From IMG/VR virus record IMGVR_UViG_3300036770_007547, positions 1 through 64,000 of that record: a DNA stretch of 64,000 nucleotides, one strand, 5' to 3'. Within the stretch, counting starts at the first letter, position 1. Every line of letters starts with the position of its first letter. A program made the translations under genes and the position numbers. Under the pieces are notes generated by a model. That model saw nothing but the letters and a program-made list of their open reading frames with translations. It had not been told where the DNA came from and made no database searches. Shown here one piece after another: positions 7,999 through 61,333 of this stretch.

Positions 7999-8086
7999 TC
8001 AGTAGAAACCATGACATTATGTGCGTTCGCACATAAATACCCATGCGAACACCCCTCGCATTCATATCACTCACAAGGAGATTCTA

Positions 8087-8230
8087 ATGACTGCTGTACT
8101 CAAACGATTTTGTTGTTTTCTGGAAAGCATAGGACGAGCTCGAGCTGCCACGGCCCTGAGCAATGCAGGTCTGCACAAAGAGGCCCGGGAACTGATGTTG
8201 GAACCTTGCACATGTGGTTGTCAAAAATAA
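8087..8230 (+). CDS. 47-aa small protein
   Basis: AAGGAG RBS; CATAAATA upstream. Confidence 0.65.
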   Translation: MTAVLKRFCCFLESIGRARAATALSNAGLHKEARELMLEPCTCGCQK

Positions 8231-8361
8231 TCGGTTGGTTGGGCAACAATTATGCCCGTAGCCTAGACCAATATCTGGCCCAACATCAACCCAAGAATCT
8301 CTATGACATCGAGCGTCTCACACGCGAACATGATCGAAGACTGTGCAACGGATATAGGTAG
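8212..8361 (+). CDS. small DUF3563-like protein
   Basis: LDQYLAQHQPKNLYDIERLTREHDR resembles DUF3563 pattern from memory. Confidence 0.5.
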   Translation: MWLSKIIGWLGNNYARSLDQYLAQHQPKNLYDIERLTREHDRRLCNGYR

Positions 8362-8489: not shown

Positions 8490-8963
8490 TCAATTGGGAA
8501 CAGAACCAGGAATTTTTGCCCTGACCGGAGTCAGCAACCATCCTTGGCCCTGGCATCGGTGCAACCATTGATAGAAACAAGGTGTGATCTCCAGTCTCCA
8601 ATCACCGTTCACACCCAAATAAGTGGTAGGACCAGGCTCTCCACCGTGCTCGTGTTCGTACACACTGAGATGTGAAAATTCAGACAACACATCTATGCCA
8701 TCCACTTCCACACGTCGCAACAGTATGGCGGTTTCTCGATCGCTGTGATAGATCTTGTGGCGCATGGAGATTTCTACAACAACCGGCTGATCGATGTGTA
8801 CCCGAGTGCTCAACTCCAAGGGTCCTTGGATCCAGTCGTCGTACAAAACGTCTCCGCTCACTGCCACTCGAGTCCAAGGTTCACCATTGTCGACCCGGAC
8901 ATCAAGTTCGATGTTTACAGGAAGCCAGATCTCAGTAGCCAGCAGTTGTGAGAAATTGTTCAT
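8490..8963 (-). CDS. hypothetical protein
   Basis: 157-aa beta-rich ORF downstream of radical SAM gene. Confidence 0.65.
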   Translation of the reverse strand: MNNFSQLLATEIWLPVNIELDVRVDNGEPWTRVAVSGDVLYDDWIQGPLELSTRVHIDQPVVVEISMRHKIYHSDRETAILLRRVEVDGIDVLSEFSHLSVYEHEHGGEPGPTTYLGVNGDWRLEITPCFYQWLHRCQGQGWLLTPVRAKIPGSVPN

Positions 8964-10209
8964 ATTCAGGCAAGTAATCTAGTATGCGGTTGCCACGACG
9001 TGACTCCAACAGCTTGATGTAATGCACTAGATCTCGAACGCGATGCGATTCGTCTGGTGCCGATTCGAGATATTTTATATAGCTCTGGCAATCCTGATGG
9101 ATCTGGGAGCGCACCCAGTCCGGATGTCGTGTGTTCAAGATCTGTGGCTGGGTCGAGGTTGATTCCACCAGGGTCGACAAACGATCTTGGGCCATCCGTC
9201 GTAGATCCTGTGGCAGTACACTGATTCGCATCATGGCCGGTTCGTTGAGGAAATCACAGCTTTCCACGGCGATGCTGTTGTCCAAGGCGTAGCGATAAAC
9301 AGTGTCAAGGTGCAGTATGGAAAACAACGTGGGCGTGATGCGTATCTGCATGAGCCAGCCATGTGATTGGCTGACCAGGCGCCACCGTTCCAACAATGCT
9401 CGGACATCATTGATGTGGCTGGGCCAACGCAGATAGTCGTTGAGATCATGCAGGCACTCGATGCTGACCCCCACATTGACTTGATGGAATCTCTCGAGCT
9501 GGGTTATCAAGTCGTCGTCCCAGACCGTGAGATTGGTGGTGAAACCAATGGTGACTTTGTGGGAGAGATCCGAGTCTATCAGCGCCTGCAAGATGCGTTG
9601 GAAGGCCGGAGTTATCATGGTCTCGCCGCCAATGAAATGCAGATATGCCAGGTTGGGAGTCTGCGACAGCATGTCAACAAATTGAGACAGCAAGGTGTCA
9701 TCGTCACACCAGGCCGGTGGCGGCATGCTGTTTATGATGCCCAATTGCAAATGTTCGCGGGCCAGTCGAGAACTGCTGTGCGGTGTGCAGAATACACAGG
9801 CCGAATTGCAGTAGTTGCCTAGATCTATTTGCCAGTCCTGCGGCAACAATTCGGTGTCGCCGTGATGGTCCATGCTGTGCTTGAACTCGTGTCGCCAGGG
9901 CGAACTCACCACAGTTTTGTCAAAGGGATCACGTATCCCAGTTTTCAAGAGTTGTTTCTGCCGACCACTGGGCTTGCCGTGTGACTCCATGATCCGGCAA
10001 GGTTGGCAACCCGAGACTTCGTTGCCTTCCAGCAGATCCAAGCGCAACGGCGACAATTTTTTCTGGAACCAAGTCACTGGGCTAACATCTTGTATGCGAT
10101 ACTGGCCCACTCTCTGTGTTTTGTCGCACCAACGGCAGTATTCGAAACTGCCGTTGTTGTTGATCCTGGCATGAAACCAGGGACTGCTACAAAAAGTCTT
10201 GTCAAGCAT
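8932..10209 (-). CDS. radical SAM protein with N-terminal Cys-rich (twitch/SPASM-like) region
   Basis: [15 protein letters not shown]; FCSSPW, YCRWC, CQPC. Confidence 0.9.
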
Positions 10210-10792
10210 CCCGATTCACAATGACCCGATCTGCCAGACCATAATCCACGCTCTGCTGGGCTGTCATGAAGTTGTCGCGTTCCATGTCGGACTTCAATTC
10301 ATCAAAACTCTTGCCAGTGTGACGGACATAGATCGTGGTCAGCACTTCTTTCCAACGCAACAGTTCTCTGGCTTGGATTTCCACGTCTGTGGCTTGCCCT
10401 GATGCGCCGCCAAGGGGTTGATGGATCATGTGGCGAGCATTGGGCAGGATCGATCGATGTCCTTTCTCACCGGCTGCAGCCAACAACGAACCCATGCTTG
10501 CGGCCTGTCCCATGACAATGGTATGCACCGGACAACGGATAAACTGCATGGTATCATAGATGCTCATACCTGCGGTGACGCTACCGCCTGGGCTGTTGAT
10601 GTAGAAATTGATGGAACGCGCCGGGTCCTCGCTCTCCAGGAACAGCATCTGTGCCACGATGAGACTGGCTGAATGGCTGGAGACTTCGGTGTCCAGCATG
10701 ATGATGCGATCTCGGAGGAGACGGCTGTAGATATCGTAACTTCGCTCGCCCTTGGATGTGTGTTCCAGGACGATGGGTACTAGATTGGGCAT
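10202..10792 (-). CDS. clpP: ATP-dependent Clp protease proteolytic subunit
   Basis: [26 protein letters not shown] (Ser), HQP (His), ERD (Asp). Confidence 0.97.
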
Positions 10793-10810: not shown

Positions 10811-11371
10811 TCAACTGATGTGGTCGCAGATGTTGTATTTCAATGCTTCTTCGGCCGAAAGATACACATCCTGGGCCGGCAACAAAATTTGTCGGATAAC
10901 ATCGTCCTCGAGGCCGGTGCATTTTTTATAGAGACTGATCATGCGCAGTTGCGTGAGTTCGAATTCTTTCACTGTGGCAAACAGCTCATGGGCCTTGCCC
11001 GAATTGTGCCACGAAAATTGGTGGCTGAGGATCGAAGTGTTTGGTGTCAACACCCGGCGGCCTGGGGAACCTGAAATGAATATGCAAAGACCGGCCGATG
11101 CGATCGATCCCAGACCCACGGTCTTGATAGGGATGGTACTGCTGTTCATGACATCGATCAAGGCAAATGCGTCTGACAAATTACCGCCATCGCTGTTGAT
11201 CATCAACAGCAATTCTTTCTTTTTGCGTTTCCTGACATGATTTTCGTGCAGGATCCACTCGATTATGGGCTTGATGTTGTCTTCGTCCACGACCCCCATC
11301 AACACCATGATACCATGGTCTTGCAGGGCTTCGCCTGGACTTTCGTATTGTAGATCTTTGTCGGTAGTCAT
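10811..11371 (-). CDS. second, divergent ClpP-family protease
   Basis: INSDGG, IASAG, SHQF, QDVYLSAEEALKY. Confidence 0.88.
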   Translation of the reverse strand: MTTDKDLQYESPGEALQDHGIMVLMGVVDEDNIKPIIEWILHENHVRKRKKKELLLMINSDGGNLSDAFALIDVMNSSTIPIKTVGLGSIASAGLCIFISGSPGRRVLTPNTSILSHQFSWHNSGKAHELFATVKEFELTQLRMISLYKKCTGLEDDVIRQILLPAQDVYLSAEEALKYNICDHIS

Positions 11372-11434
11372 AGCGTCCTTGAAAGAAATAGCGGGCGTCA
11401 CCATTGGGCAACGGCCCGCTATACTTAGCCTAGG

Positions 11435-12049
11435 CTACTGGGCGGTATCAGGTTTGTTTGGCTGGCTCACACCCTGATCTTGCATGCGATCCAGTTCGCG
11501 GAAAGCCTCCTGTGCCCGGCGCTCGGCTCGCACAGTCTCTTCTCGACGATCCCGTTCGCGTGCCAAGGGATTGGCATCGCCAGTGGGCAAGGCCACCAGA
11601 ACAAAGGTGCGGAATCTCGAACCCTCGGCGATCATCTTGCTCTCGACCACTTCTACCCCAGTGATGTCAACATTGGGGCAAAAACTCTTGATGGCCATTT
11701 CGCTGAACTCGCTGTCAGTGTTCTGAGCGCCTTCTCTACGGAACAATCGGCTGTGCTGATTGACTCGTCCACCAGCGGCCATACAGATCTTGCCAAATGC
11801 CACGGTCTTGGCTTTGTCAGTGCTCATGGCCATGTCGGAACTGGTAGAGGTACCATTGGCATAGATGGCCGAAGTGCTCTTGGGCAGTTTGGTCATCCAC
11901 TCCGGAGCCTTGTCGATGGCATTTTCTGCCAGGCGCTCTTGGTACTTGCGCTCTTGGTAGGCGCGGTTTTCAAAGTTGTCCTTGGGCGCACTAGAACATG
12001 CGGCCAAAACCGATGCAACCAAAGGTACTAGCAGTAGTTTCTTGTTCAT
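11435..12049 (-). CDS. lipoprotein (LPP20-like)
   Basis: Lipobox LAAC; PEW motif. Confidence 0.75.
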   Translation of the reverse strand: MNKKLLLVPLVASVLAACSSAPKDNFENRAYQERKYQERLAENAIDKAPEWMTKLPKSTSAIYANGTSTSSDMAMSTDKAKTVAFGKICMAAGGRVNQHSRLFRREGAQNTDSEFSEMAIKSFCPNVDITGVEVVESKMIAEGSRFRTFVLVALPTGDANPLARERDRREETVRAERRAQEAFRELDRMQDQGVSQPNKPDTAQ

Positions 12050-12256: not shown

Positions 12257-12832
12257 CTAGAACTTGTCCACCACCACCCATTTCTGGGGGCGCACCTCAC
12301 AGATGATGCCCTGATGCTGTCGTATGTCATTTTGGTCAAAAGTGGGTTCCACGAACCATTTACACACAGTGCCGTTGTGCCAGAATCGGTTTGGATAATT
12401 GGGATGTGGGCGGAACTGAGCCACGTCGCCGATCTCGCCCGGTCTCGTGGTTTTGATTGTTTTCAGTTCGGGACGATCCTTGCACACCAGTATCTGTTCG
12501 GAGGCCACAGCCGCACCGCCCAGTCGAGTCTTGACATCGGTCTCGGCGCGATACACTGCTATGGTACAAGCATCATGCTCGGTGCGATTACCACCTTTCC
12601 AGCTGTATTCGCCCATGGCCGTGTACCATCGGCTGCCCACTCGTACCCGGAAATCCACCACGCACTTTTTGGCGCCTGAAGGCAGTACGACTATGTCGCG
12701 CCGCACAGGGCTACGCTCGCTGATCACTGCTCGATTCTGGGTCACAGTCTTGTTCTGCAACACACATTGTTCGTTTTCTTGCGCCAGGGCCAACATCGGC
12801 AGCGCCATCAGCATCAACACAGCGGGTTTCAT
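12257..12832 (-). CDS. secreted Cys-rich protein
   Basis: Signal peptide ending ALA; six Cys. Confidence 0.75.
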   Translation of the reverse strand: MKPAVLMLMALPMLALAQENEQCVLQNKTVTQNRAVISERSPVRRDIVVLPSGAKKCVVDFRVRVGSRWYTAMGEYSWKGGNRTEHDACTIAVYRAETDVKTRLGGAAVASEQILVCKDRPELKTIKTTRPGEIGDVAQFRPHPNYPNRFWHNGTVCKWFVEPTFDQNDIRQHQGIICEVRPQKWVVVDKF

Positions 12833-13161
12833 GGGCAGTTGTTCCTTATATCCAACATGAGTTGATTCACCAACCAGTCCACACGCCCGGATCCAATGTT
12901 GTGACGCTGATGATATGTGGCGGGTTCGGTGATGACTTTCCAGAACTGCAATTGATTGGCGACCCGGGACTGTAGTTCTTGATCAGGCGTGGTTCTCATG
13001 CTTTCTAAAAATGCCATCTGTTGATGTTTGATGCGGCAATCTATCACGAATCTCTCGAGATCGCCCACCCACATCTGGGCCTGTGCATCAACGCATGACA
13101 GGCTGGCAAGCATAACGAATGCTCCAGATACGAGCCTTGATCTGGCTTTGGAGTTGGGCAT
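12829..13161 (-). CDS. putative secreted protein (start uncertain)
   Basis: Hydrophobic stretch then AQA; ATGA coupling. Confidence 0.55.
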   Translation of the reverse strand: MPNSKARSRLVSGAFVMLASLSCVDAQAQMWVGDLERFVIDCRIKHQQMAFLESMRTTPDQELQSRVANQLQFWKVITEPATYHQRHNIGSGRVDWLVNQLMLDIRNNCP

Positions 13162-13348
13162 ATTCAACCTCGCTTTGATTGGATTGTCTGGGCACCTGTG
13201 CCGTGGACTCCAGCCATCGGATGATGGAGTGCTGATTGTAGCAATCAATCGGCACCGAGTTCACTGCCACTGACGCACGCTGACTGTGATTTACCGCACA
13301 GCCCGATGCCAAAAGGGATATCGCACACAAAAGGAAAATCCTGTTCAT
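13088..13348 (-). CDS. small lipoprotein
   Basis: Lipobox LASGC; ATG 6 nt after -10 box. Confidence 0.7.
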   Translation of the reverse strand: MNRIFLLCAISLLASGCAVNHSQRASVAVNSVPIDCYNQHSIIRWLESTAQVPRQSNQSEVEYAQLQSQIKARIWSIRYACQPVMR

Positions 13349-13354
13349 GCACAC

Positions 13355-13385
13355 ATAGTACACGAACAGGATTTATTGGTCAACC
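13355..13385 (-). promoter_or_regulatory. early promoter cassette, copy 5 (leaderless)
   Basis: GGTTGACC-N17-TACTAT-N6-ATG. Confidence 0.8.
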
Positions 13386-13393
13386 AGTCCAGA

Positions 13394-13675
13394 TTACTCG
13401 GATTTGGCTGCGGGTTTGGACATGTAGGCCTTCATGATGCCTTCGCCGAACTTGTTGTAGTCAAATTTGGCAGCATCTTGCACATGCTTGATGGTCTCAC
13501 TCATCACTGTGGTAGTGGCATCAACAGTGGCCTTGGCTGCACGCTTGGTGTAGTCGGTCTGGCTGTCAATGAACTCGTTGAGTGCATCAGCGATCTTCGC
13601 ATCAACAACGAAGGTCTTGACGAATTGCTTTTTGGTGTTTTGTACTTGGTCGATCACGGTGTCTACTGCAAACAT
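13394..13675 (-). CDS. phasin-like amphipathic helical protein
   Basis: 93 aa, Ala/Thr/Lys-rich and helical; AAAGGAGA RBS; PhaR-box-like site upstream. Confidence 0.55.
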   Translation of the reverse strand: MFAVDTVIDQVQNTKKQFVKTFVVDAKIADALNEFIDSQTDYTKRAAKATVDATTTVMSETIKHVQDAAKFDYNKFGEGIMKAYMSKPAAKSE

Positions 13676-13736
13676 GGTGTTTCTCCTTTGATTAAGCGAG
13701 CTTGGTTGTTGGACCCGCCCCATGCGGCATCCAACT
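13676..13736 (-). promoter_or_regulatory. ROSE-like structured 5' leader
   Basis: Hairpin GTTGGA...TCCAAC then CTCGCTTAATCAAAGGAGA (UCGCU can pair with SD). Confidence 0.55.
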
Positions 13737-13764
13737 GCACTTCATGATTATATATGATACTTAT

Positions 13765-13776
13765 TGCACTGCACAA
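13765..13776. promoter_or_regulatory. PhaR-box-like site
   Basis: TGCACTGCACAA fits TGCRNYGCASMA (consensus recalled). Confidence 0.5.
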
Positions 13777-13820
13777 GATTTTATCTGCCCAGATAATGAA
13801 TTTTGGATGACATCCAAACG

Positions 13821-14012
13821 TCACCAGTGTCGTATGGTGTTGGCGATGATGAATCCGCATGTGACCACATGCACCACCACCCAAAAGGTCTTGAGCGCTA
13901 GAGCGACTCGAGCCTCTCGTAATGTGAGTATGGGCACCCGAGGTCGGTCTTGATCGTTGGTGCCCATGAGATGCCCGGTGGCCCGGGCCCAGATGCGTTC
14001 GAAGCTGTTCAA
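13821..14012 (-). CDS. small membrane protein
   Basis: C-terminal TM helix; overlaps aceA stop. Confidence 0.65.
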
Positions 14013-15289
14013 TGGAACTGCTCCTCTTCGGTACTGCCCTTGAGAGCTTGTGTGCTGGCATTGGCTTCGATGGTGGTGGTCACGCGATCAAAATAACCGG
14101 TACCTACTTCCCTTTGATGCCGTACAGCTTCAAAACCACGACTCGCATCCGCGAACTCACGCTCTTGTAGCTCCACGAAAGCAGACATGCCGTTCCTAGC
14201 ATAACCATGAGCAAGATCAAACATGCCATGATTAAGAGCATGGAATCCAGCAAGTGTGATGAATTGAAAACGGTAACCCATTGCTCCAAGTTCACGTTGG
14301 AAACGACCAATTGTGTCTGCATCTAGGTTTTTCCTCCAGTTGAATGATGGTGAGCAGTTGTAGGCCAGCATCTTGTTGGGATAATGCCGGTGGATGCCTT
14401 CGGCGAACCTACGGGCAAAATCAAGATCTGGAGTTCCAGTCTCGCACCATATGAGATCGGCGTAGGGCGCATAGGCCAGGCCTCGGGCCAAGGCTTGATC
14501 AAAACCTTTGCGGGTGCGATAGAATCCTTCTACCGTCCTCTCGCCTGTAAGAAAATCTTGATCGCGTGGATCAATATCTGAGGTAACAAGATCAGCAGCC
14601 TCAGCGTCAGTTCTAGCAAGGAGAATGGTAGGCACACCCAAAACATCAGCCGCGAGTCTCGCAGCCGTGAGCTTATTGATGGCTTCTTGTGTTGGTACAA
14701 GGACTTTCCCTCCCATGTGTCCGCATTTCTTGACCGAGGCCAATTGGTCCTCGAAGTGTACTCCCGAAGCTCCGGCTCGGATCATGGCCTTCATGAGTTC
14801 AAAAGCATTGAGCACACCACCAAAGCCAGCTTCGGCGTCGGCCACGATGGGAGCGAAGAAATCGTGATCGTTTTTATCTTCCATCCATTGGATCTGATCC
14901 GCACGTTCGAATGTGTGATTGATGCGGCGCACCACTGCGGGCACTGAATCCGCTGGATACAGGCTTTGATCTGGATACATCTCCCCGGCCAAGTTGGCGT
15001 CCGCAGCCACTTGCCACCCACTCAGATAGATGGCTTGGAGCCCTGCTTTGACTTGTTGCAGGGCCTGCATGCCCGTCAATGCACCCAGAGTGTTGATGTA
15101 ATCGTTTTCATTGAGCAGTCGCCAGAGTTTCTTGGCACCATTCGTGGCTCGAGTATGCACTTCGGGTTCGGATCCGCGCAGTCGTATCACGTCTTCGGCG
15201 CTGTATTCTCGTCTCACGCCTTGCCATCTCGGATCGCTGGACCACTGCTGTTGTAATTCGTATATTTGTGCCTGTTTGGTGTGATGCAT
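14009..15289 (-). CDS. aceA: isocitrate lyase
   Basis: [11 protein letters not shown] signature; [36 protein letters not shown]. Confidence 0.98.
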
Positions 15290-15378
15290 GTTCGTCCCCT
15301 AAATTTTGCATCTATTTATTTTTATGCAATGCAAAAAAAATTATTTCATAAATAGCTGCACTATAGGAGATACTCAAC

Positions 15379-15708
15379 ATGGAATTAGCTCTGGGACTGA
15401 TTGCTATCATCGCAATAGGAACCATCATTTGGTTCAATCGTGGAACCAAAAATCTTGATGTCAACGCCGACGGCAAGGTCGATCTCGCAGACGCCAAGGC
15501 TGCTGTGACCAACACTGTGCAAGGTGTAAAAGACGCTGCCGATCTCAACAAGGATGGCAAAGTCGATGCCGCTGATGTCAAGGTAGCTACCAAGGCTGTC
15601 AAGAGCACTGCTGCTGGTGCTGCTGGTGCTGCCAAGCGCACCGTGACACGCGCCAAAAAAGCCGTGGTCGCAAAAACCAATAAATCTGCTACGAAAAAAT
15701 CATCCTAG
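15379..15708 (+). CDS. membrane-anchored protein with two EF-hand-like loops and Lys/Ala-rich tail
   Basis: N-terminal TM; DVNADGKVD and DLNKDGKVD; AGGAGA RBS. Confidence 0.8.
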   Translation: MELALGLIAIIAIGTIIWFNRGTKNLDVNADGKVDLADAKAAVTNTVQGVKDAADLNKDGKVDAADVKVATKAVKSTAAGAAGAAKRTVTRAKKAVVAKTNKSATKKSS

Positions 15709-15979
15709 TCAGGCCCACTGAATCGATGCCGGCCAACAGCATGTAGTTGGCCAGCATCCCAAAACTTTGCCGGGTCCAAGCGGCCCAGGCATAGATCGCA
15801 CAACCCAAAATAAAGAACGGATATATCAATATCAGCGGAGGGTTGGGCACGGTGGCCGCCATCCACAAACTGCAACCGATACTCAAGGCCCAGGCCAATG
15901 CTTCTAGCACGAATCTCAATGGATAACTGCGGAAGTCTTGTTTGATCCATGCAAACGTGGGTCGCAACAAATCTATCAC
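15689..15979 (-). CDS. small multi-TM membrane protein
   Basis: Three hydrophobic helices; GTGA coupling to uvsE. Confidence 0.7.
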   Translation of the reverse strand: MIDLLRPTFAWIKQDFRSYPLRFVLEALAWALSIGCSLWMAATVPNPPLILIYPFFILGCAIYAWAAWTRQSFGMLANYMLLAGIDSVGLTRMIFS

Positions 15980-17001
15980 AACACATACTCCCGAGCAAAC
16001 GAATGGCTGGCTAGGTTCTTGCCTTTGCTTTCGCACATGATGTCAAACTCTGTGGAAAAAGTGGCTGCCCACTCATTGACTGCACGATTCCAGTAGAAAT
16101 CGCTGTGTGCTCGAAGTTTGCCTTTCTTGTAGCCCCGGGCCAACAGATCAGTCAAGTCCGGAGCAACATCTACATCGTGCCCGACCAGTATGTCCTCACG
16201 GCTGACACTGTAATGTATGACCGGGCGACGCAGACCACGCCAACTGTCACGAACTTTTTTGACACGGTCATCCTGGGCACTGATGTATTCCCCGGTCTTG
16301 ATCCAGTGGTGATGTATGTCTAACACCAGAGCGAGATGGTCTGCCAGTTCGAGGCTGGCGTCGAGTCCCCAGGACATTTCGTCGTTTTCGATGGTGATAC
16401 AATTTCGCGCCTCTGGTGAGAGACGCCCAAGTGTGTGGATGATACCGGCTGGACCTTTTCGACCCGAGATGTGGACGTTGATTTTAAAGTCCTGGAAGGT
16501 ACGTCCATAACCCATCCAGCGGGCCATATCTGCATGATATTCAAACTCCTCTATGCTTCTATTTACGATGTCTTCGCTTTCGCTGGCCAGAACACAGAAC
16601 TGTCCGGGATGGAAGCTGAGCCTTACACCCAAGCGACGAGCAGCTTCGCCGATGGGCGCAAATATACGCTCGCAATGGTCCTGGATCTCCCGGCGCTGCC
16701 ACCACTCGCGCCAGCTGGGCTCGGTGTAGCCCTGCAACATCTCTGAACCCAGGCGTACCATCCGCAGTTCCGGCTCCAGAGCGCCCACGGTCTCGACCAT
16801 GCGCAAGGCCGCAGCGGCATTGTGGTTCATGATGTCCCACTGGCGTTGTTCGGCTTCCTCGGGGTGCTCGCGCAGCCAGCGCATGGTGGTTGATCTACCA
16901 TTGAGTTCACGGTTGGAGGCATTCACTTTCATGCCCCCGCATTCCGAGGGATCAGTGAGCCATTTGCATGCGAAACCGATGCGAGAGTGTGTAGTAGTCA
17001 T
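15976..17001 (-). CDS. uvsE: UV damage endonuclease
   Basis: RIGFAC, RLSFHPGQF, TIENDE, VLDIHHH, RAHSD, MCESKGKNLA. Confidence 0.95.
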   Translation of the reverse strand: MTTTHSRIGFACKWLTDPSECGGMKVNASNRELNGRSTTMRWLREHPEEAEQRQWDIMNHNAAAALRMVETVGALEPELRMVRLGSEMLQGYTEPSWREWWQRREIQDHCERIFAPIGEAARRLGVRLSFHPGQFCVLASESEDIVNRSIEEFEYHADMARWMGYGRTFQDFKINVHISGRKGPAGIIHTLGRLSPEARNCITIENDEMSWGLDASLELADHLALVLDIHHHWIKTGEYISAQDDRVKKVRDSWRGLRRPVIHYSVSREDILVGHDVDVAPDLTDLLARGYKKGKLRAHSDFYWNRAVNEWAATFSTEFDIMCESKGKNLASHSFAREYVL

Positions 17002-17046
17002 ACCAGTATTGTAACACGGGCATGATTATGTTGCAACAGCAAACGG

Positions 17047-17391
17047 TCAGCGATTGAATCCGGCCGTTTCCCGTTCTATGTCGTTGTGATCAAACTCGGC
17101 CCAGTAAAGCTCGAAAGCAATGGTATCCTCTAGTGCTTCGAACTGATGGTACTCTCCGGGTGCCACTTTGGTATACTGCCCCGGATGCAAAATGGTTTCA
17201 TCCACGAGATCATAGTCCTTTTTCCAGACTCGCACCAACAAGCGACCAGATTCTACGAAAAATCCGTTCCATTTATGGCGATGGCAGTGCTTGCTACACA
17301 CACCGCCTTGTCGAGCTTCGATCCTATGGAATTCCAATACTCCATTGGCTTCCAAGAGTTCGGTATTTCCCCATACTTTTCCTGCCAGCAT
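17047..17391 (-). CDS. cupin (sugar-isomerase-like)
   Basis: KVWG, CSKHCHRHK, PGEYHQF. Confidence 0.8.
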   Translation of the reverse strand: MLAGKVWGNTELLEANGVLEFHRIEARQGGVCSKHCHRHKWNGFFVESGRLLVRVWKKDYDLVDETILHPGQYTKVAPGEYHQFEALEDTIAFELYWAEFDHNDIERETAGFNR

Positions 17392-46373: not shown

Positions 46374-46426
46374 TTTATTTCTCCTAGTTTGTGGGCTTTT
46401 GCCCTACACTTATTTATACCTTTGAT

Positions 46427-54702: not shown

Positions 54703-54723
54703 AGGGATCTCCAACTGATATTT

Positions 54724-55101
54724 ATGGGCGAAAACATTTTAAAAACATTGAGCGAACGCTACCCCTTCATGACCATATGTGTTCATGCTGGAAACGAATA
54801 CATCGGGATCATACAAAACCGAGACGAAACAGTGACCACCTTGTATGACTTTGGTGCCATAACCAGCGAGCCTTTGAAGGAAGCCTATCTCGAACTGGCC
54901 TCGGATTGGTGGTGGGAAAGCAATCACAGCATACCCATAAACATTTTCCTCAAAACAGAATGGGACCCTTTCCGTTTCTGTCTGCGCACATTCAGCAACA
55001 AGGACCTAGAAATAATACACGGGCCTGTTTGCAGCATCAATGACATCAGTCGCCGGCGCAGTAAACGTCGCAGCATCACGCTGGTGCGTTATTCAGACTG
55101 A
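54724..55101 (+). CDS. hypothetical phage protein
   Basis: YPFMT, WWWESN..IPINIFL; TATAAATA upstream. Confidence 0.75.
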   Translation: MGENILKTLSERYPFMTICVHAGNEYIGIIQNRDETVTTLYDFGAITSEPLKEAYLELASDWWWESNHSIPINIFLKTEWDPFRFCLRTFSNKDLEIIHGPVCSINDISRRRSKRRSITLVRYSD

Positions 55102-60411: not shown

Positions 60412-60442
60412 ATTGTACCAGATCGGGAATTATTGGTCAACC
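60412..60442 (-). promoter_or_regulatory. early promoter cassette, copy 11
   Basis: GGTTGACC-N17-TACAAT. Confidence 0.85.
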
Positions 60443-60445
60443 ATG

Positions 60446-60472
60446 AAAAACCCTGCTCGGGGCAGGGTTTTT
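60446..60472. terminator. bidirectional intrinsic terminator
   Basis: AAAAACCCTGC-TCGGG-GCAGGGTTTTT. Confidence 0.85.
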
Positions 60473-60490
60473 GGCGGCGCAACAAAAATA

Positions 60491-61297: not shown

Positions 61298-61333
61298 TGT
61301 GCGATTCTCCAGTGCTGTATTTATGGCTGATTT

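What the first reader, a model, noticed from the sequence alone, without database searches (positions are those of the whole stretch)
13394..15340. Possible PHA-granule exploitation module: phasin-like gene and isocitrate lyase with PhaR-box-like sites
Seen: TGCACTGCACAA (13765-76) upstream of a 93-aa amphipathic phasin-like gene, and TGCAATGCAAAA (15325-36) upstream of intact aceA. Established (consensus recalled): PhaR binds TGCRNYGCASMA-type boxes at phasin promoters and is released by PHB. PHB breakdown yields acetyl-CoA, which needs the glyoxylate shunt for anabolism. Inference: the phage reads host carbon-store status through PhaR and diverts PHB carbon. No malate synthase or PHA depolymerase is in this window.
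Basis: partly seen in the sequence, partly recalled or inferred. Interest (0 to 1): 0.72.

Follow-up and report, generated by a model that had tools for sequence, protein, structure and literature searches.

The report
Host PhaR operator on phage genes
A family of giant phages of Burkholderiales carries, in front of a conserved small helical protein gene and of a captured isocitrate lyase gene, the same DNA operator that the host regulator PhaR uses on phasin genes. The phage therefore probably switches these genes according to whether the cell holds PHB carbon stores.

Summary
Both boxes are at the stated coordinates. Counted in this window alone they are no more frequent than chance. Comparison with relatives shows they are real.

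- **The operator.** The palindrome TGC-N3-GCA with matching flanks sits about 30 bases before the transcript start of the 93-aa gene (phl). It is exact in 43 of 67 distinct related phage promoters. It is the same motif found upstream of 23 of 33 bacterial Phasin_2 genes, and it matches the published PhaR operators of Ralstonia eutropha, Herbaspirillum seropedicae and Sinorhizobium meliloti.
- **Blind test.** A weight matrix built only from the bacterial boxes picks the phl promoter as the best site of the whole ~10-kb locus in 49 of 66 relatives. It also picks it as the best site of a complete 352,754-bp relative. In this genome the best site is the aceA promoter.
- **aceA.** The gene is an intact isocitrate lyase. 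It was acquired once from Burkholderiales and is driven by a T4-like late promoter (ATAAATA).
- **phl.** It is a core, separately transcribed gene with a covarying 5' leader hairpin. It is amphipathic and all-helical, but homology to phasins is not established; there are only weak, consistent hints.
- **What is not supported.** phl and aceA are not a conserved module: aceA lay within the 5-kb flanks of phl in 3 of 80 loci. No phaR, phaC, phaZ, aceB or Phasin_2 gene was found in this record or in four relatives that are 91-100% complete.

The PhaR-gating reading is partly supported. PhaR binding itself is untested.

The parts
13394..13675 (-). phl: 93-aa, all-helical, amphipathic protein. It is a core gene of a jumbo-myovirus clade.
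   Evidence: ORF and ribosome-binding site. Relatives: 63 clusters, 325 IMG/VR contigs, 368 clusters at 50% identity. AF2 model: pLDDT 83, helices 2-22, 26-70 and 73-85. Amphipathicity.
13336..13374 (-). Intrinsic terminator-like hairpin (17 pairs followed by a T-rich tail) directly after phl.
13683..13687 (-). Shine-Dalgarno sequence AGGAG of phl. It belongs to the block AGGAGAAA, which is conserved in relatives.
13708..13735 (-). Hairpin at or near the 5' end of the phl mRNA. The outer stem covaries. The inner stem is GCYG/CGGG-like and the loop AU(A/G)GG is conserved.
   Evidence: Across 43 distinct sequences, 91% of cells are paired against 77% in shuffles. There are 58 double-change cells against 18.5 in shuffles. 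Slid-partner controls reach at most 51%. Rfam gives only a sub-threshold ROSE_3 match.
13692..13702 (-). Conserved leader block (A)AACTYGCTTAA between the hairpin and the ribosome-binding site.
   Evidence: columns invariant or nearly invariant
13747..13752 (-). -10 hexamer TATAAT of the sigma-70-type phl promoter. The -35-like TTGTGC lies at 13771-13776, with an 18-nt spacer.
   Evidence: TAYAAT is present in nearly all relatives, 18-19 nt downstream of the box centre.
13761..13777 (.). PhaR-type operator at the phl promoter, centred about 30 bases before the transcript start. Core TGCAGTGCA on the sense strand.
   Evidence: 16 of 17 positions match YTKNTGCRNYGCANMAR. It scores 13.7 bits with the host-derived matrix, which is below the host minimum of 16.2. 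The homologous box is exact in 43 of 67 relatives.
13781..13796 (.). Second palindrome, TTATCTG-N2-CAGATAA, just upstream of the box. It is unique in this genome and its function is unknown.
   Evidence: 25 of 66 relatives have AGTGA-N3-5-TCACT at the same place, and host phasin loci have none.
14009..15289 (-). aceA: intact isocitrate lyase, 426 aa, with the catalytic KKCGH motif present.
   Evidence: Pfam ICL E 1.4e-108. Full-length match to solved ICL 3i4e, E 4e-220. It sits in a viral clade of 32 rows (support 96) nested among Burkholderiales ICLs.
14919..14935 (.). A third site, inside the aceA coding sequence, within one mismatch of the R. eutropha PhaR consensus. Whether it matters is uncertain.
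   Evidence: 13.3 bits.
15313..15319 (-). T4-like late-promoter motif ATAAATA, 30 nt upstream of the aceA start codon.
   Evidence: In this genome the same motif precedes the tail tube, tail sheath, baseplate hub and virion structural genes.
15321..15337 (.). PhaR-type operator immediately upstream of the aceA late promoter. Core TGCATTGCA on the sense strand.
   Evidence: 17 of 17 positions match the consensus on both strands. It is the best host-matrix site of the whole 222,775-bp record, at 18.1 bits. Homologous boxes lie in front of aceA in a subset of relatives.
8020..8039 (+). Related palindrome with one extra central base (TGTGCG-TT-CGCACA), fused to a late-promoter ATAAATA. It lies upstream of two tiny ORFs, 8088-8231 and 8212-8361.
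   Evidence: The homologous site in the complete relative G067 is an N3 box. It is the second-best host-matrix site of that genome, at 21.5 bits.

Best explanation
The window is the first 64 kb of a fragment of a jumbo myovirus (222,775 bp held, CheckV completeness 64%). Its clade is common in freshwater, lagoon and subsurface metagenomes and most likely infects Burkholderiales.

**phl.** It is a core gene of the clade and forms its own transcription unit:
- a sigma-70-type promoter;
- a hairpin at the start of the mRNA that probably stabilises the message or serves as a binding site;
- a strong ribosome-binding site;
- a 93-aa amphipathic three-helix protein;
- a terminator.

**The operator.** A 15-17-bp palindrome with core TGC-R-N-Y-GCA overlaps the -35 region. 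It cannot be told apart from the operator that the host repressor PhaR binds at phasin promoters. The same palindrome abuts the late-type promoter (ATAAATA) of aceA, an isocitrate lyase captured once from a Burkholderiales host. In relatives it also precedes a small conserved ORF.

**Inferred mechanism.** The phage encodes no PhaR, so host PhaR would occupy these operators and repress the genes in cells without PHB. In cells with PHB granules PhaR is held on the granules, and phl and aceA are transcribed. The phage thus matches part of its programme to the host's carbon store.
- phl probably acts at the granule surface as a phasin analogue or competitor.
- Isocitrate lyase, working with the host's own malate synthase, lets acetyl-CoA from PHB or fatty acids be used for biosynthesis.

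**Shown:** the anatomy, the conservation, the identity of the motif with bacterial phasin-gene boxes and published PhaR sites, the origin of aceA, and the late-promoter motif.

**Inferred:** PhaR binding, the direction of regulation, phl at granules, and the carbon flow.
For: **Motif conservation.**
- TGCRNYGCA is exact in 43 of 67 distinct phl promoters. Seven more have a variant with one extra central base, and most of the rest differ by one base.
- Background density in the same loci is 0.127 per kb.
- The box centre lies 18-19 nt before the TAYAAT -10 hexamer.
- The box persists in relatives with only about 35% protein identity.
- In some relatives it sits in the spacer between TTGACA and the -10 (L070, L080). 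The box is kept while its position shifts, as expected of an operator.

**Identity with the host operator.**
- 23 of 33 bacterial Phasin_2 genes have 1-3 boxes of the form AT(G/T)(T/C)TGC-N3-GCA(A/C)(A/C)A(T/A) upstream.
- Published sites agree: R. eutropha YTKNTGCRNYGCANMAR, with sites beside the -35 and at the transcript start (PMC12849132). H. seropedicae TG[N]TGC[N]3GCAA, confirmed by DNase I footprint and EMSA (PMC3206438). S. meliloti YGCRNYGCR, confirmed by EMSA, with an ICL-family protein among the PhaR-repressed set (PMC12542648).

**Blind test with the matrix built from 42 bacterial boxes.**
- The top site of the whole locus is the phl promoter in 49 of 66 loci, against about 0.8 expected.
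- It is the top site of the complete 352,754-bp relative, at 24.3 bits; the host median is 21.8.
- The top site of this genome is the aceA promoter.
- The top site of the locus lies within 80 nt of aceA in 6 of 28 loci, against about 0.2 expected.

**Specificity.** There are only 2-3 intergenic boxes per genome, so this is not a general promoter element.

**No phage PhaR.** None was found in this record or in four relatives that are 91-100% complete.

**Host.** aceA is 74-78% identical to Burkholderiales ICLs and nests among them. All 5 Burkholderiales genomes examined have Phasin_2 and PhaR.

**Hints that phl resembles phasins.**
- Phasin_2 is the only Pfam family hit repeatedly: 9 of 145 family members, best E 1.2e-4.
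- Phasin models are the most often hit NCBIfam families, 2 of 145 members each.
- The only named cluster among the 100 nearest ESM Atlas clusters is a Phasin_2 cluster.
- The top Swiss-Prot fold hit is a haloarchaeal PhaP, at E 0.72.
- hhalign against short phasins gives P 0.0065, in the same register as the first run.
- Real phasins score above their own shuffles with the phl profile.
Against: - No binding or expression data exist. No RNA run was listed, and the PhaR-DNA complex job was not folded.
- The host is inferred, not known.
- In this particular phage the phl box is a weaker match (13.7 bits) than any of the 42 host boxes (minimum 16.2).
- A variant with one extra central base (TGCG-N2-CGCA) replaces the box at homologous positions in 7 of 67 relatives and at window 8020-8033. 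The 33 host phasin promoters sampled show no such palindrome (only two marginal TGC-N4-GCA strings). PhaR may not tolerate that spacing.
- phl is not a detectable phasin homologue. The profile of 145 family members finds nothing in five Burkholderiales genomes. hhalign probability is 0.2-5.8%. The fold is a generic helical hairpin.
- aceA and phl are rarely neighbours.
- Many phage aceA genes lack a good box.
- Neither this record nor four near-complete to complete relatives (91-100%) carries any other pha gene.
Confidence: 0.55

Rival explanations
1. The palindrome is the operator of a phage-encoded regulator. That regulator could be phl itself acting as a small autoregulator, or an unrecognised DNA-binding protein. 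On this reading the likeness to the PhaR operator is coincidental.
For: - Small phage proteins that autoregulate through palindromes over their own promoter are common (general knowledge).
- The variant with one extra central base swaps with the N3 box at homologous promoters, as if a co-evolving factor were involved.
- A second palindrome, unique in each genome, lies next to the box.
- 10 of 31 close family members give weak hits to the HU-type Bac_DNA_binding family, best E 0.0015.
- One family member is fused to a LacI-type helix-turn-helix domain.
Against: - The motif matches bacterial phasin-gene boxes in its flanks as well as its core. A matrix built only from the bacterial boxes ranks the phage sites first in whole loci and whole genomes.
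- phl is predicted as long helices with no helix-turn-helix, and it has no net charge (13 K+R against 13 D+E).
- The HU hits are sub-threshold and cover only a helical stretch.
Confidence: 0.17
2. The operator is a real PhaR site, but phl has nothing to do with PHB granules. It could be an abundant protein of another function, such as a virion or internal protein, a chaperone-like factor or an anti-defence factor, that is merely timed by PhaR. Alternatively, the many operator copies on replicating phage DNA act as a decoy that titrates PhaR and derepresses host pha genes.
For: - No significant phasin homology.
- The generic helical fold also resembles T7 gp14-like internal virion proteins and others in the ESM Atlas search.
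- The gene has features of very high expression: its own promoter, a 5' hairpin, a strong ribosome-binding site and a terminator.
- The protein is very strongly conserved, with 19 invariant positions in 31 sequences.
Against: - In bacteria, genes behind such operators are mostly phasins and other PHB-metabolism genes (PMC3206438, PMC12542648).
- Several independent weak signals all point to phasins and to no other family.
- All three helices are amphipathic.
Confidence: 0.22
3. The boxes are chance matches or simply the -35 part of an ordinary promoter, with no operator function.
For: In the window alone the pattern counts equal chance. The left half of the box supplies a TTG-containing -35-like hexamer.
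Against: - The right half of the palindrome is conserved as well.
- The box keeps its sequence while moving relative to the -35 and -10 in some relatives.
- It is about 30-fold enriched over local background.
- It also occurs at late-type promoters, which need no -35.
- The host matrix ranks it first.
Confidence: 0.04

Closest known systems
PhaR (PhbF/AniA) operators at bacterial phasin promoters (R. eutropha phaP1, H. seropedicae phaP1/phbF, S. meliloti phaP1/2)
   Same: The palindrome and its flanks are the same: TGC-R-N-Y-GCA, as in TG[N]TGC[N]3GCAA and YTKNTGCRNYGCANMAR. It overlaps or abuts the core promoter of a gene for a small amphipathic helical protein. An ICL-family gene is in the PhaR-repressed set in S. 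meliloti.
   Different: - Here the sites are on a virus that has no phaR of its own.
- There is usually one box, centred about 30 bases before the transcript start. Hosts have two, flanking the promoter.
- One box is fused to a T4-type late promoter.
- A variant with one extra central base occurs.
- Binding is untested.
Phasins of the Phasin_2 family (PF09361; PhaP1 of R. eutropha)
   Same: Small, all-helical, amphipathic and without net charge. Its promoter carries a PhaR-type operator. There are weak, consistent sequence and fold hints.
   Different: About half the length of PhaP1. No model reaches its cut-off. Profile-profile probability is at most 5.8%. The FDYxKFGEGIMKAY C-terminus, invariant or nearly so, has no phasin counterpart. 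Granule binding is unknown.
Isocitrate lyase genes reported in huge phages and marine viral genomes
   Same: aceA as a phage auxiliary metabolic gene has already been described. One study found 98 ICL genes in 98 huge phages, including freshwater and deep-subsurface ones (bioRxiv 10.1101/2025.02.27.640493). Another found an aceBA operon in a marine viral genome (PMC5332604).
   Different: Here there is no malate synthase. The reported malate synthases were likewise found only in marine, soil and plant-related habitats. Neither the promoter architecture (late motif plus PhaR-type box) nor a link to PHB turned up in the papers found.
Host-regulator boxes on phage auxiliary genes (cyanophage PhoB boxes at pstS/phoA and NtcA sites; recalled from memory, not checked here)
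   Same: The logic is the same: a phage promoter carries the operator of a host nutrient-status regulator, so that an auxiliary gene follows the physiological state of the host.
   Different: A different regulator, a different signal (a carbon-storage polymer sensed by sequestration of the repressor) and a different host group. Here the main regulated gene is a conserved core gene of unknown function, not only an acquired metabolic gene.
T4-type late promoters (TATAAATA)
   Same: ATAAATA lies 21-59 nt before the starts of tail tube, sheath, baseplate and virion genes, and of aceA.
   Different: The motif is fused to an upstream palindromic operator at aceA and at the small-ORF promoter. The late sigma factor of this phage was not sought.

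Membership tests
PhaR-type operator (PhaR regulon site) | Palindrome with conserved TGC/GCA triplets three bases apart and matching flanks (YTKNTGCRNYGCANMAR; TG[N]TGC[N]3GCAA) | tested here: met
   phl box 16 of 17 and aceA box 17 of 17 positions. The clade consensus ATGTTGCANTGCAACAT contains TGTTGC-N3-GCAA. The host-derived matrix ranks the phage sites first.
PhaR-type operator (PhaR regulon site) | Position overlapping or abutting the core promoter, so that a bound repressor blocks RNA polymerase | tested here: met
   The box centre lies 18-19 nt upstream of the -10 hexamer at phl. At aceA the box lies directly upstream of ATAAATA. Transcript starts are predicted, not mapped.
PhaR-type operator (PhaR regulon site) | Bound by PhaR protein and released in the presence of PHB | not testable with these tools
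   The complex-prediction job was not folded. EMSA or footprinting is needed.
PhaR-type operator (PhaR regulon site) | The host encodes PhaR and makes PHB | tested here: inconclusive
   The host is not identified. The inferred host order, Burkholderiales, has PhaR and Phasin_2 in all 5 genomes examined.
Phasin_2 (PF09361) / TIGR01841 phasins | Score above the curated cut-off of the family model | tested here: not met
   The window protein has no hit. 9 of 145 relatives have sub-threshold Pfam hits, best E 1.2e-4. 2 of 145 hit each NCBIfam phasin model.
Phasin_2 (PF09361) / TIGR01841 phasins | Profile-profile homology to true phasins | tested here: inconclusive
   hhalign against 33 phasins: probability 0.2%. 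Against 16 short phasins: P 0.0065, probability 5.8%, same register. The family profile finds no phasin in five genomes.
Phasin_2 (PF09361) / TIGR01841 phasins | Small amphipathic helical protein | tested here: met
   AF2 model with three helices, pLDDT 83. Hydrophobic moment 0.39-0.49, exceeded by at most 2.6% of shuffles.
Phasin_2 (PF09361) / TIGR01841 phasins | Binds the surface of PHA granules | not testable with these tools
   Needs localisation or granule co-purification.
Isocitrate lyase (PF00463, EC 4.1.3.1) | Family model above cut-off, full length, catalytic KKCGH loop | tested here: met
   364 bits against a cut-off of 26. Aligns over residues 4-425 to solved ICL 3i4e, E 4e-220, with KKCGH conserved.
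Complete glyoxylate shunt (aceBA) on the phage | A malate synthase gene is present | tested here: not met
   No PF01274 match in this record or in four relatives that are 91-100% complete. This record is only 64% complete.
Phage-borne PHA module (phaC / phaZ / phaR) | Any of PhaC_N, PHB_depo_C or PHB_acc_N encoded by the phage | tested here: not met
   0 of 5 records for each family.
T4-type late promoter | An ATAAATA-like -10 element upstream of virion genes | tested here: met
   37 copies in the genome, 16 of them 21-59 nt before ORFs of at least 60 aa that have a ribosome-binding site. These include tail tube, sheath, baseplate hub and structural proteins.

The most novel reading that the evidence does not exclude
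A widespread clade of jumbo phages has taken over the host's PHB-sensing circuit. Host PhaR, released from DNA when PHB granules are present, licenses a phage-encoded minimal phasin. That protein coats or remodels the granules, and a captured isocitrate lyase uses the mobilised acetyl units. Infection would then be tuned to, and fed by, the cell's carbon store. This would be the first virus-encoded granule-associated protein and the first phage use of a storage-polymer sensor.
Probability: 0.3. Interest if true: 0.85.

Novelty: new variant of a known kind. Interest (0 to 1): 0.74.

Why it matters
PHB is a major carbon and energy reserve of Burkholderiales and many other environmental bacteria. 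How phages deal with stored carbon is essentially unknown.

A host PhaR operator on conserved phage promoters would give phages a direct read-out of the host's carbon reserve. That would add a new sensory input to the few known cases where phage genes carry boxes for host nutrient regulators.

It also makes a concrete hypothesis testable with standard tools in C. necator or H. seropedicae. It assigns a first functional lead to a conserved protein family of unknown function found in at least 325 viral contigs. And it gives regulatory context to the isocitrate lyase genes recently catalogued in huge phages.

If phl binds PHB granules, a 93-aa minimal phasin could also be of biotechnological interest as a granule tag.

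Tried and rejected
- **Cultured phage relatives.** Megablast of 10 kb and tblastn of phl against 50,697 GenBank phage records gave no match. tblastn of aceA found only one real phage with ICL (C48C1, 57.6% identity) plus bacterial contigs misfiled as phages.
- **PHROGs.** No family for phl or aceA. Five families were each hit by one or two of the 145 phl relatives.
- **Solved structures.** The profile search gave nothing meaningful.
- **Fold searches.** PDB, AFDB clusters, Swiss-Prot models and ESM Atlas returned only generic helical matches, all with E at least 0.3.
- **Profile of 145 family members against five Burkholderiales genomes.** No hit at E up to 1 other than a spurious one.
- **Rfam on 13300-15450.** Only ROSE_3 at 25.8 bits against a gathering score of 43. 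I rejected it as a family assignment.
- **Sequencing runs.** DNA runs only (a subsurface metagenome holds the sequence) and no RNA run listed, so expression was not examined and read laying was not used.
- **Complex prediction of a PhaR dimer with the phl operator.** Not folded by the tool. It is no evidence either way.
- **General phage promoter element?** Rejected. There are only 2-3 intergenic copies per genome. The general late motif is ATAAATA, and early promoters look like TTGAC-N-TGnTAYAAT.
- **CRP-like site for the second palindrome?** Rejected, because the spacing is wrong (sequences).
- **Unpublished genome.** Loci of G044 (L257, L272) were left out of all analyses.
Full report
**1. 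What the window is**

The window is the first 64 kb of a single 222,775-bp IMG/VR virus record that CheckV rates 64% complete. Near-complete and complete relatives are 316-353 kb, two of them with terminal repeats.

The genome encodes a tail sheath, tail tube and baseplate hub, so it is a jumbo myovirus. The sequence is held almost in full by a subsurface-metagenome DNA run, and in part by lagoon and lake runs. No RNA run was listed. No cultured phage in GenBank resembles it.

**2. The observation**

The 93-aa ORF at 13394-13675 (-) has a strong ribosome-binding site and is followed by a 17-pair terminator hairpin. aceA at 14009-15289 (-) is a full-length isocitrate lyase. It scores 364 bits with Pfam ICL and E 4e-220 against solved structure 3i4e, and the KKCGH catalytic loop is intact.

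On sequence statistics alone the finding would have failed.

**3. The gene called phl**

The protein belongs to a large family that is recorded almost only from viruses:
- 63 clusters at 90% identity;
- 325 IMG/VR contigs, many of 300-350 kb;
- 368 clusters at 50% identity;
- ESM Atlas clusters that are 88-100% viral.

It is strongly conserved, with 19 invariant positions among 31 sequences. These include much of a C-terminal FDYxKFGEGIMKAY block.

AlphaFold2 gives three helices (2-22, 26-70, 73-85) at mean pLDDT 83. All three are amphipathic.

The gene keeps its neighbourhood with UvdE (46 of 80 loci) and ClpP (47 of 80). aceA was found within the 5-kb flanks in only 3 of 80 loci, which come from nearly identical contigs. 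So phl is a core gene and aceA is a local insertion. They are not a conserved module.

**4. The promoter region is the real finding**

I aligned 130 nt upstream of phl from 67 distinct relatives. The order of conserved elements is:
- a palindrome with consensus ATGTTGCA-N-TGCAACAT;
- an (extended) -10 element, TGTTACAAT or TATAAT;
- a hairpin;
- the block AAACTYGCTTAA;
- AGGAGAAA and the start codon.

The core TGCRNYGCA is exact in 43 of 67. Seven have a variant with one extra central base (TGCG-N2-CGCA), and most of the others differ by one base. Background density in the same loci is 0.127 per kb. The box centre lies 18-19 nt before the -10 hexamer, which centres it about 30 bases before the transcript start.

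Relatives with only about 35% protein identity still carry the box. In L070 and L080 the box sits in the spacer of a TTGACA/-10 promoter instead. The sequence is kept while its position shifts, which is what an operator does and what a mere -35 element does not.

The box is rare in whole genomes. In this record the only intergenic copies are at phl and aceA. In the complete relative G067 they are at phl and in front of a 54-aa ORF. It is therefore not a general promoter element of the phage.

**5. Whose operator is it?**

aceA pointed to Burkholderiales (section 7), so I took phasin genes from Pandoraea, Burkholderia, Ralstonia, Roseateles and Ramlibacter. All five phaP1-type promoters have two boxes of the same kind, one just upstream of the -35 and one just after the -10. 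Examples are TTGTGCAACGCACAA and ATGTTGCAGTGCAGCA.

In a wider sample, 23 of 33 Phasin_2 genes have 1-3 such boxes within 250 nt upstream, and N3 spacing is essentially the only spacing seen.

The literature identifies these as PhaR sites:
- R. eutropha: YTKNTGCRNYGCANMAR, with sites beside the -35 and at the transcript start (PMC12849132).
- H. seropedicae: TG[N]TGC[N]3GCAA, confirmed by DNase I footprint and EMSA on eleven promoters (PMC3206438).
- R. sphaeroides: CTGC-N3-GCAG, as cited in PMC3206438.
- S. meliloti: YGCRNYGCR, confirmed by EMSA, with an ICL-family protein among the PhaR-repressed proteins (PMC12542648).

The window's phl box matches the R. eutropha consensus in 16 of 17 positions and the aceA box in 17 of 17. 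A third one-mismatch site lies inside aceA. Three of the four such sites in 222,775 bp therefore fall within 1.6 kb.

**6. A blind test**

I built a weight matrix only from the 42 bacterial boxes and scanned the phage DNA with it.
- The single best 17-mer of the whole ~10-kb locus falls in the phl promoter in 49 of 66 distinct loci, against about 0.8 expected by chance.
- In the complete 352,754-bp relative the best site of the genome is the phl box, at 24.3 bits. The host median is 21.8. The second best is the small-ORF promoter, at 21.5 bits.
- In this record the best site is the aceA box, at 18.1 bits.
- The phl box of this particular phage is weaker, at 13.7 bits, which is below the lowest host box at 16.2. 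That is a caveat for this genome but not for the clade.

None of five phage records, four of them 91-100% complete, encodes a PhaR-like protein. If the box is read by PhaR, it is the host's PhaR.

**7. aceA**

The window's ICL is 74-78% identical to ICLs of Burkholderiales such as Rubrivivax, Pandoraea and Burkholderiaceae. In a maximum-likelihood tree it falls in a viral clade of 32 rows (support 96) nested among Burkholderiales sequences. This indicates one capture followed by spread within the phage lineage. About 97 IMG/VR contigs carry a related ICL.

ICL in huge phages is already in the literature, as is an aceBA operon in a marine viral genome. The gene itself is therefore not new.

What is new is its promoter. 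ATAAATA lies 30 nt before the start codon. That motif precedes the tail tube, sheath, baseplate hub and virion genes of this genome, so it is a T4-like late promoter. The PhaR-type box lies directly upstream of it.

Among relatives whose aceA has its own promoter, about half keep an exact TGC-N3-GCA core at the same place. With the host matrix, the best site of the locus lies within 80 nt of aceA in 6 of 28 loci, against about 0.2 expected. Three more loci have good sites there. Others have decayed boxes, or aceA lies inside an operon. The aceA-box link is real but partial.

**8. Is phl a phasin?**

It is not demonstrably one.
- No phasin model reaches its cut-off for this protein.
- The family profile finds no phasin in five Burkholderiales genomes.
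- hhalign against 33 true phasins gives a probability of 0.2%.
- Fold searches return generic helical proteins.

Yet every weak signal points the same way.
- Phasin_2 is the only Pfam family hit repeatedly: 9 of 145 relatives, best E 1.2e-4.
- Phasin models are the most often hit NCBIfam families.
- The only named cluster among the 100 nearest ESM Atlas neighbours is a Phasin_2 cluster.
- The top hit among 550,129 Swiss-Prot models is a haloarchaeal PhaP, at E 0.72.
- hhalign against 16 short phasins gives P 0.0065 over 39 columns, in the same register as the first run.
- True phasins score above their own shuffles with the phl profile.

With the operator in front of it, 'phasin analogue' is a reasonable working hypothesis. 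I put it at about one in three.

**9. The leader**

The transcript probably begins at a hairpin, 13708-13735 in the window. Over 43 distinct sequences:
- 91% of cells are paired, against 77% in shuffles;
- 58 cells show changes on both sides, against 18.5 in shuffles;
- sliding the partner column drops pairing to 51% or less.

The loop AU(A/G)GG and the following AAACTYGCTTAA block are conserved in sequence. A stabilising 5' hairpin or a protein or sRNA binding site are both possible. Rfam offers only a sub-threshold ROSE_3 match.

**10. Mechanism proposed**

Shown:
- the anatomy of the transcription unit;
- the conservation, position and rarity of the box;
- its identity with bacterial phasin-gene boxes and published PhaR sites;
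- the absence of a phage PhaR;
- the Burkholderiales origin of aceA;
- the late-promoter motif.

Inferred:
- host PhaR represses phl (host RNA polymerase, early) and aceA (late) in PHB-free cells and is titrated away by granules in PHB-rich cells;
- phl acts on granules;
- ICL, together with the host's malate synthase, turns PHB-derived or other acetyl-CoA into biosynthetic precursors.

No aceB, phaC, phaZ or Phasin_2 gene was found in this record, and no aceB, phaC or phaZ in the relatives.

**11. What does not fit**

- The variant with one extra central base replaces the N3 box at homologous promoters. This happens at phl in 7 of 67 relatives, and at window 8020-8033 where G067 has N3. It is not seen as a palindrome at host phasin genes.
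- A second palindrome, unique in each genome, lies 10-25 nt upstream of the box. It is TTATCTG-N2-CAGATAA here and AGTGA-N3-5-TCACT in 25 of 66 relatives.

Both leave room for a second factor, possibly phage-encoded.

**12. Verdict**

- The PhaR-box idea is supported by independent comparative evidence.
- The phasin identity is unproven.
- The phl-aceA 'module' is not supported.

No report of a PhaR operator or a phasin-like gene on a phage turned up in the paper library. The nearest known kind, recalled from memory, is host nutrient-regulator boxes on cyanophage auxiliary genes. I file this as a new variant of that kind.

Noticed in passing
whole G000 record; in the window e.g. 15313-15319 (-), 15348-15354 (+), 46411-46417 (-), 54719-54725 (-), 61318-61324 (-): ATAAATA occurs 37 times in the genome. 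Sixteen copies lie 21-59 nt before ORFs of at least 60 aa that have a ribosome-binding site, including tail tube, tail sheath, baseplate hub and virion proteins. This is a T4-like late-promoter motif. Early-type promoters look like GTTGAC-N14-TGnTAYAAT (e.g. 7309, 60420, 17016 on the - strand).
   Followed up: partly
window 13781-13796; G067 346211-346226 (L295): A second perfect palindrome lies just upstream of the phl operator and is unique in each genome. It is TTATCTG-N2-CAGATAA here and TAGTGA-N4-TCACTA in G067. 25 of 66 relatives have AGTGA-N3-5-TCACT. It is absent from host phasin loci and its function is unknown.
   Followed up: partly
window 8020-8039 (+), ORFs 8088-8231 (+) and 8212-8361 (+): A palindrome with one extra central base (TGTGCG-TT-CGCACA) is fused to a late-promoter motif in front of two tiny ORFs. 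The flanking repeat CAGTAGAAACCATGA and a homologue of the second ORF occur in G067. There the box has N3 spacing and is the second-best host-matrix site of that genome.
   Followed up: partly
window 15379-15708 (+): A 109-aa protein divergent from aceA. It has an N-terminal hydrophobic helix, two EF-hand/dockerin-like calcium-binding loops (Dockerin_1 E 1.5e-7) and a lysine- and alanine-rich tail. It is preceded by CATAAATA. No homologue lay within 5 kb of phl in 80 relatives.
   Followed up: no
window 10202-10792 (-) and 10811-11404 (-): Two adjacent ClpP-like genes. The second has Pfam CLP_protease at E 1.6e-27. The first is a divergent paralogue, about 27% identical to the G067 ClpP by tblastn. 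Both are syntenic with phl in more than 40 of 80 relatives.
   Followed up: no
window 15976-17001 (-), promoter around 17016-17045: A UvdE-type UV endonuclease (Pfam E 7.8e-31; PHROG endonuclease E 6.9e-70). Its sigma-70-like promoter has a -35 region that is a spacer-less palindrome, TGTTGCAACA, followed by TGTTACAAT. This resembles half of the phl box.
   Followed up: no
window 8932-10209 (-), 17047-17391 (-): A radical-SAM protein (PHROG E 2.5e-10) and a small cupin (Cupin_2; PHROG 'cysteine dioxygenase' E 4.8e-13) lie among the auxiliary genes near the finding.
   Followed up: no
window 11435-12049 (-), 12257-12832 (-), 12829-13248 (-), 13088-13363 (-): A run of small proteins with signal-peptide or lipoprotein-like N-termini lies downstream of phl. 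They are conserved next to phl in 19-27 of 80 relatives and match no family.
   Followed up: no
proteins P0171 and P0078 (relatives from the 50%-identity library): One family member has a LacI-type helix-turn-helix domain (E 6e-14) fused to the C-terminal two thirds of the phl domain. Another is a tandem duplication of the domain. The fusion could be an assembly artefact. It could also hint that the phl domain serves as a partner or ligand-binding module.
   Followed up: partly
window 60469-60485: A site with one mismatch to the R. eutropha PhaR consensus (core TGG instead of TGC) lies about 28 nt upstream of the -35 of a sigma-70-like promoter at about 60412-60441 (-). It is probably chance.
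   Followed up: no
phage record OQ984149.1 (Phage C48C1, 156,191 bp): This is the only genuine GenBank phage in the collection with an ICL (57.6% identity), and there it is annotated as a hypothetical protein. Several 'phage' records that hit aceA are bacterial contigs.
   Followed up: no
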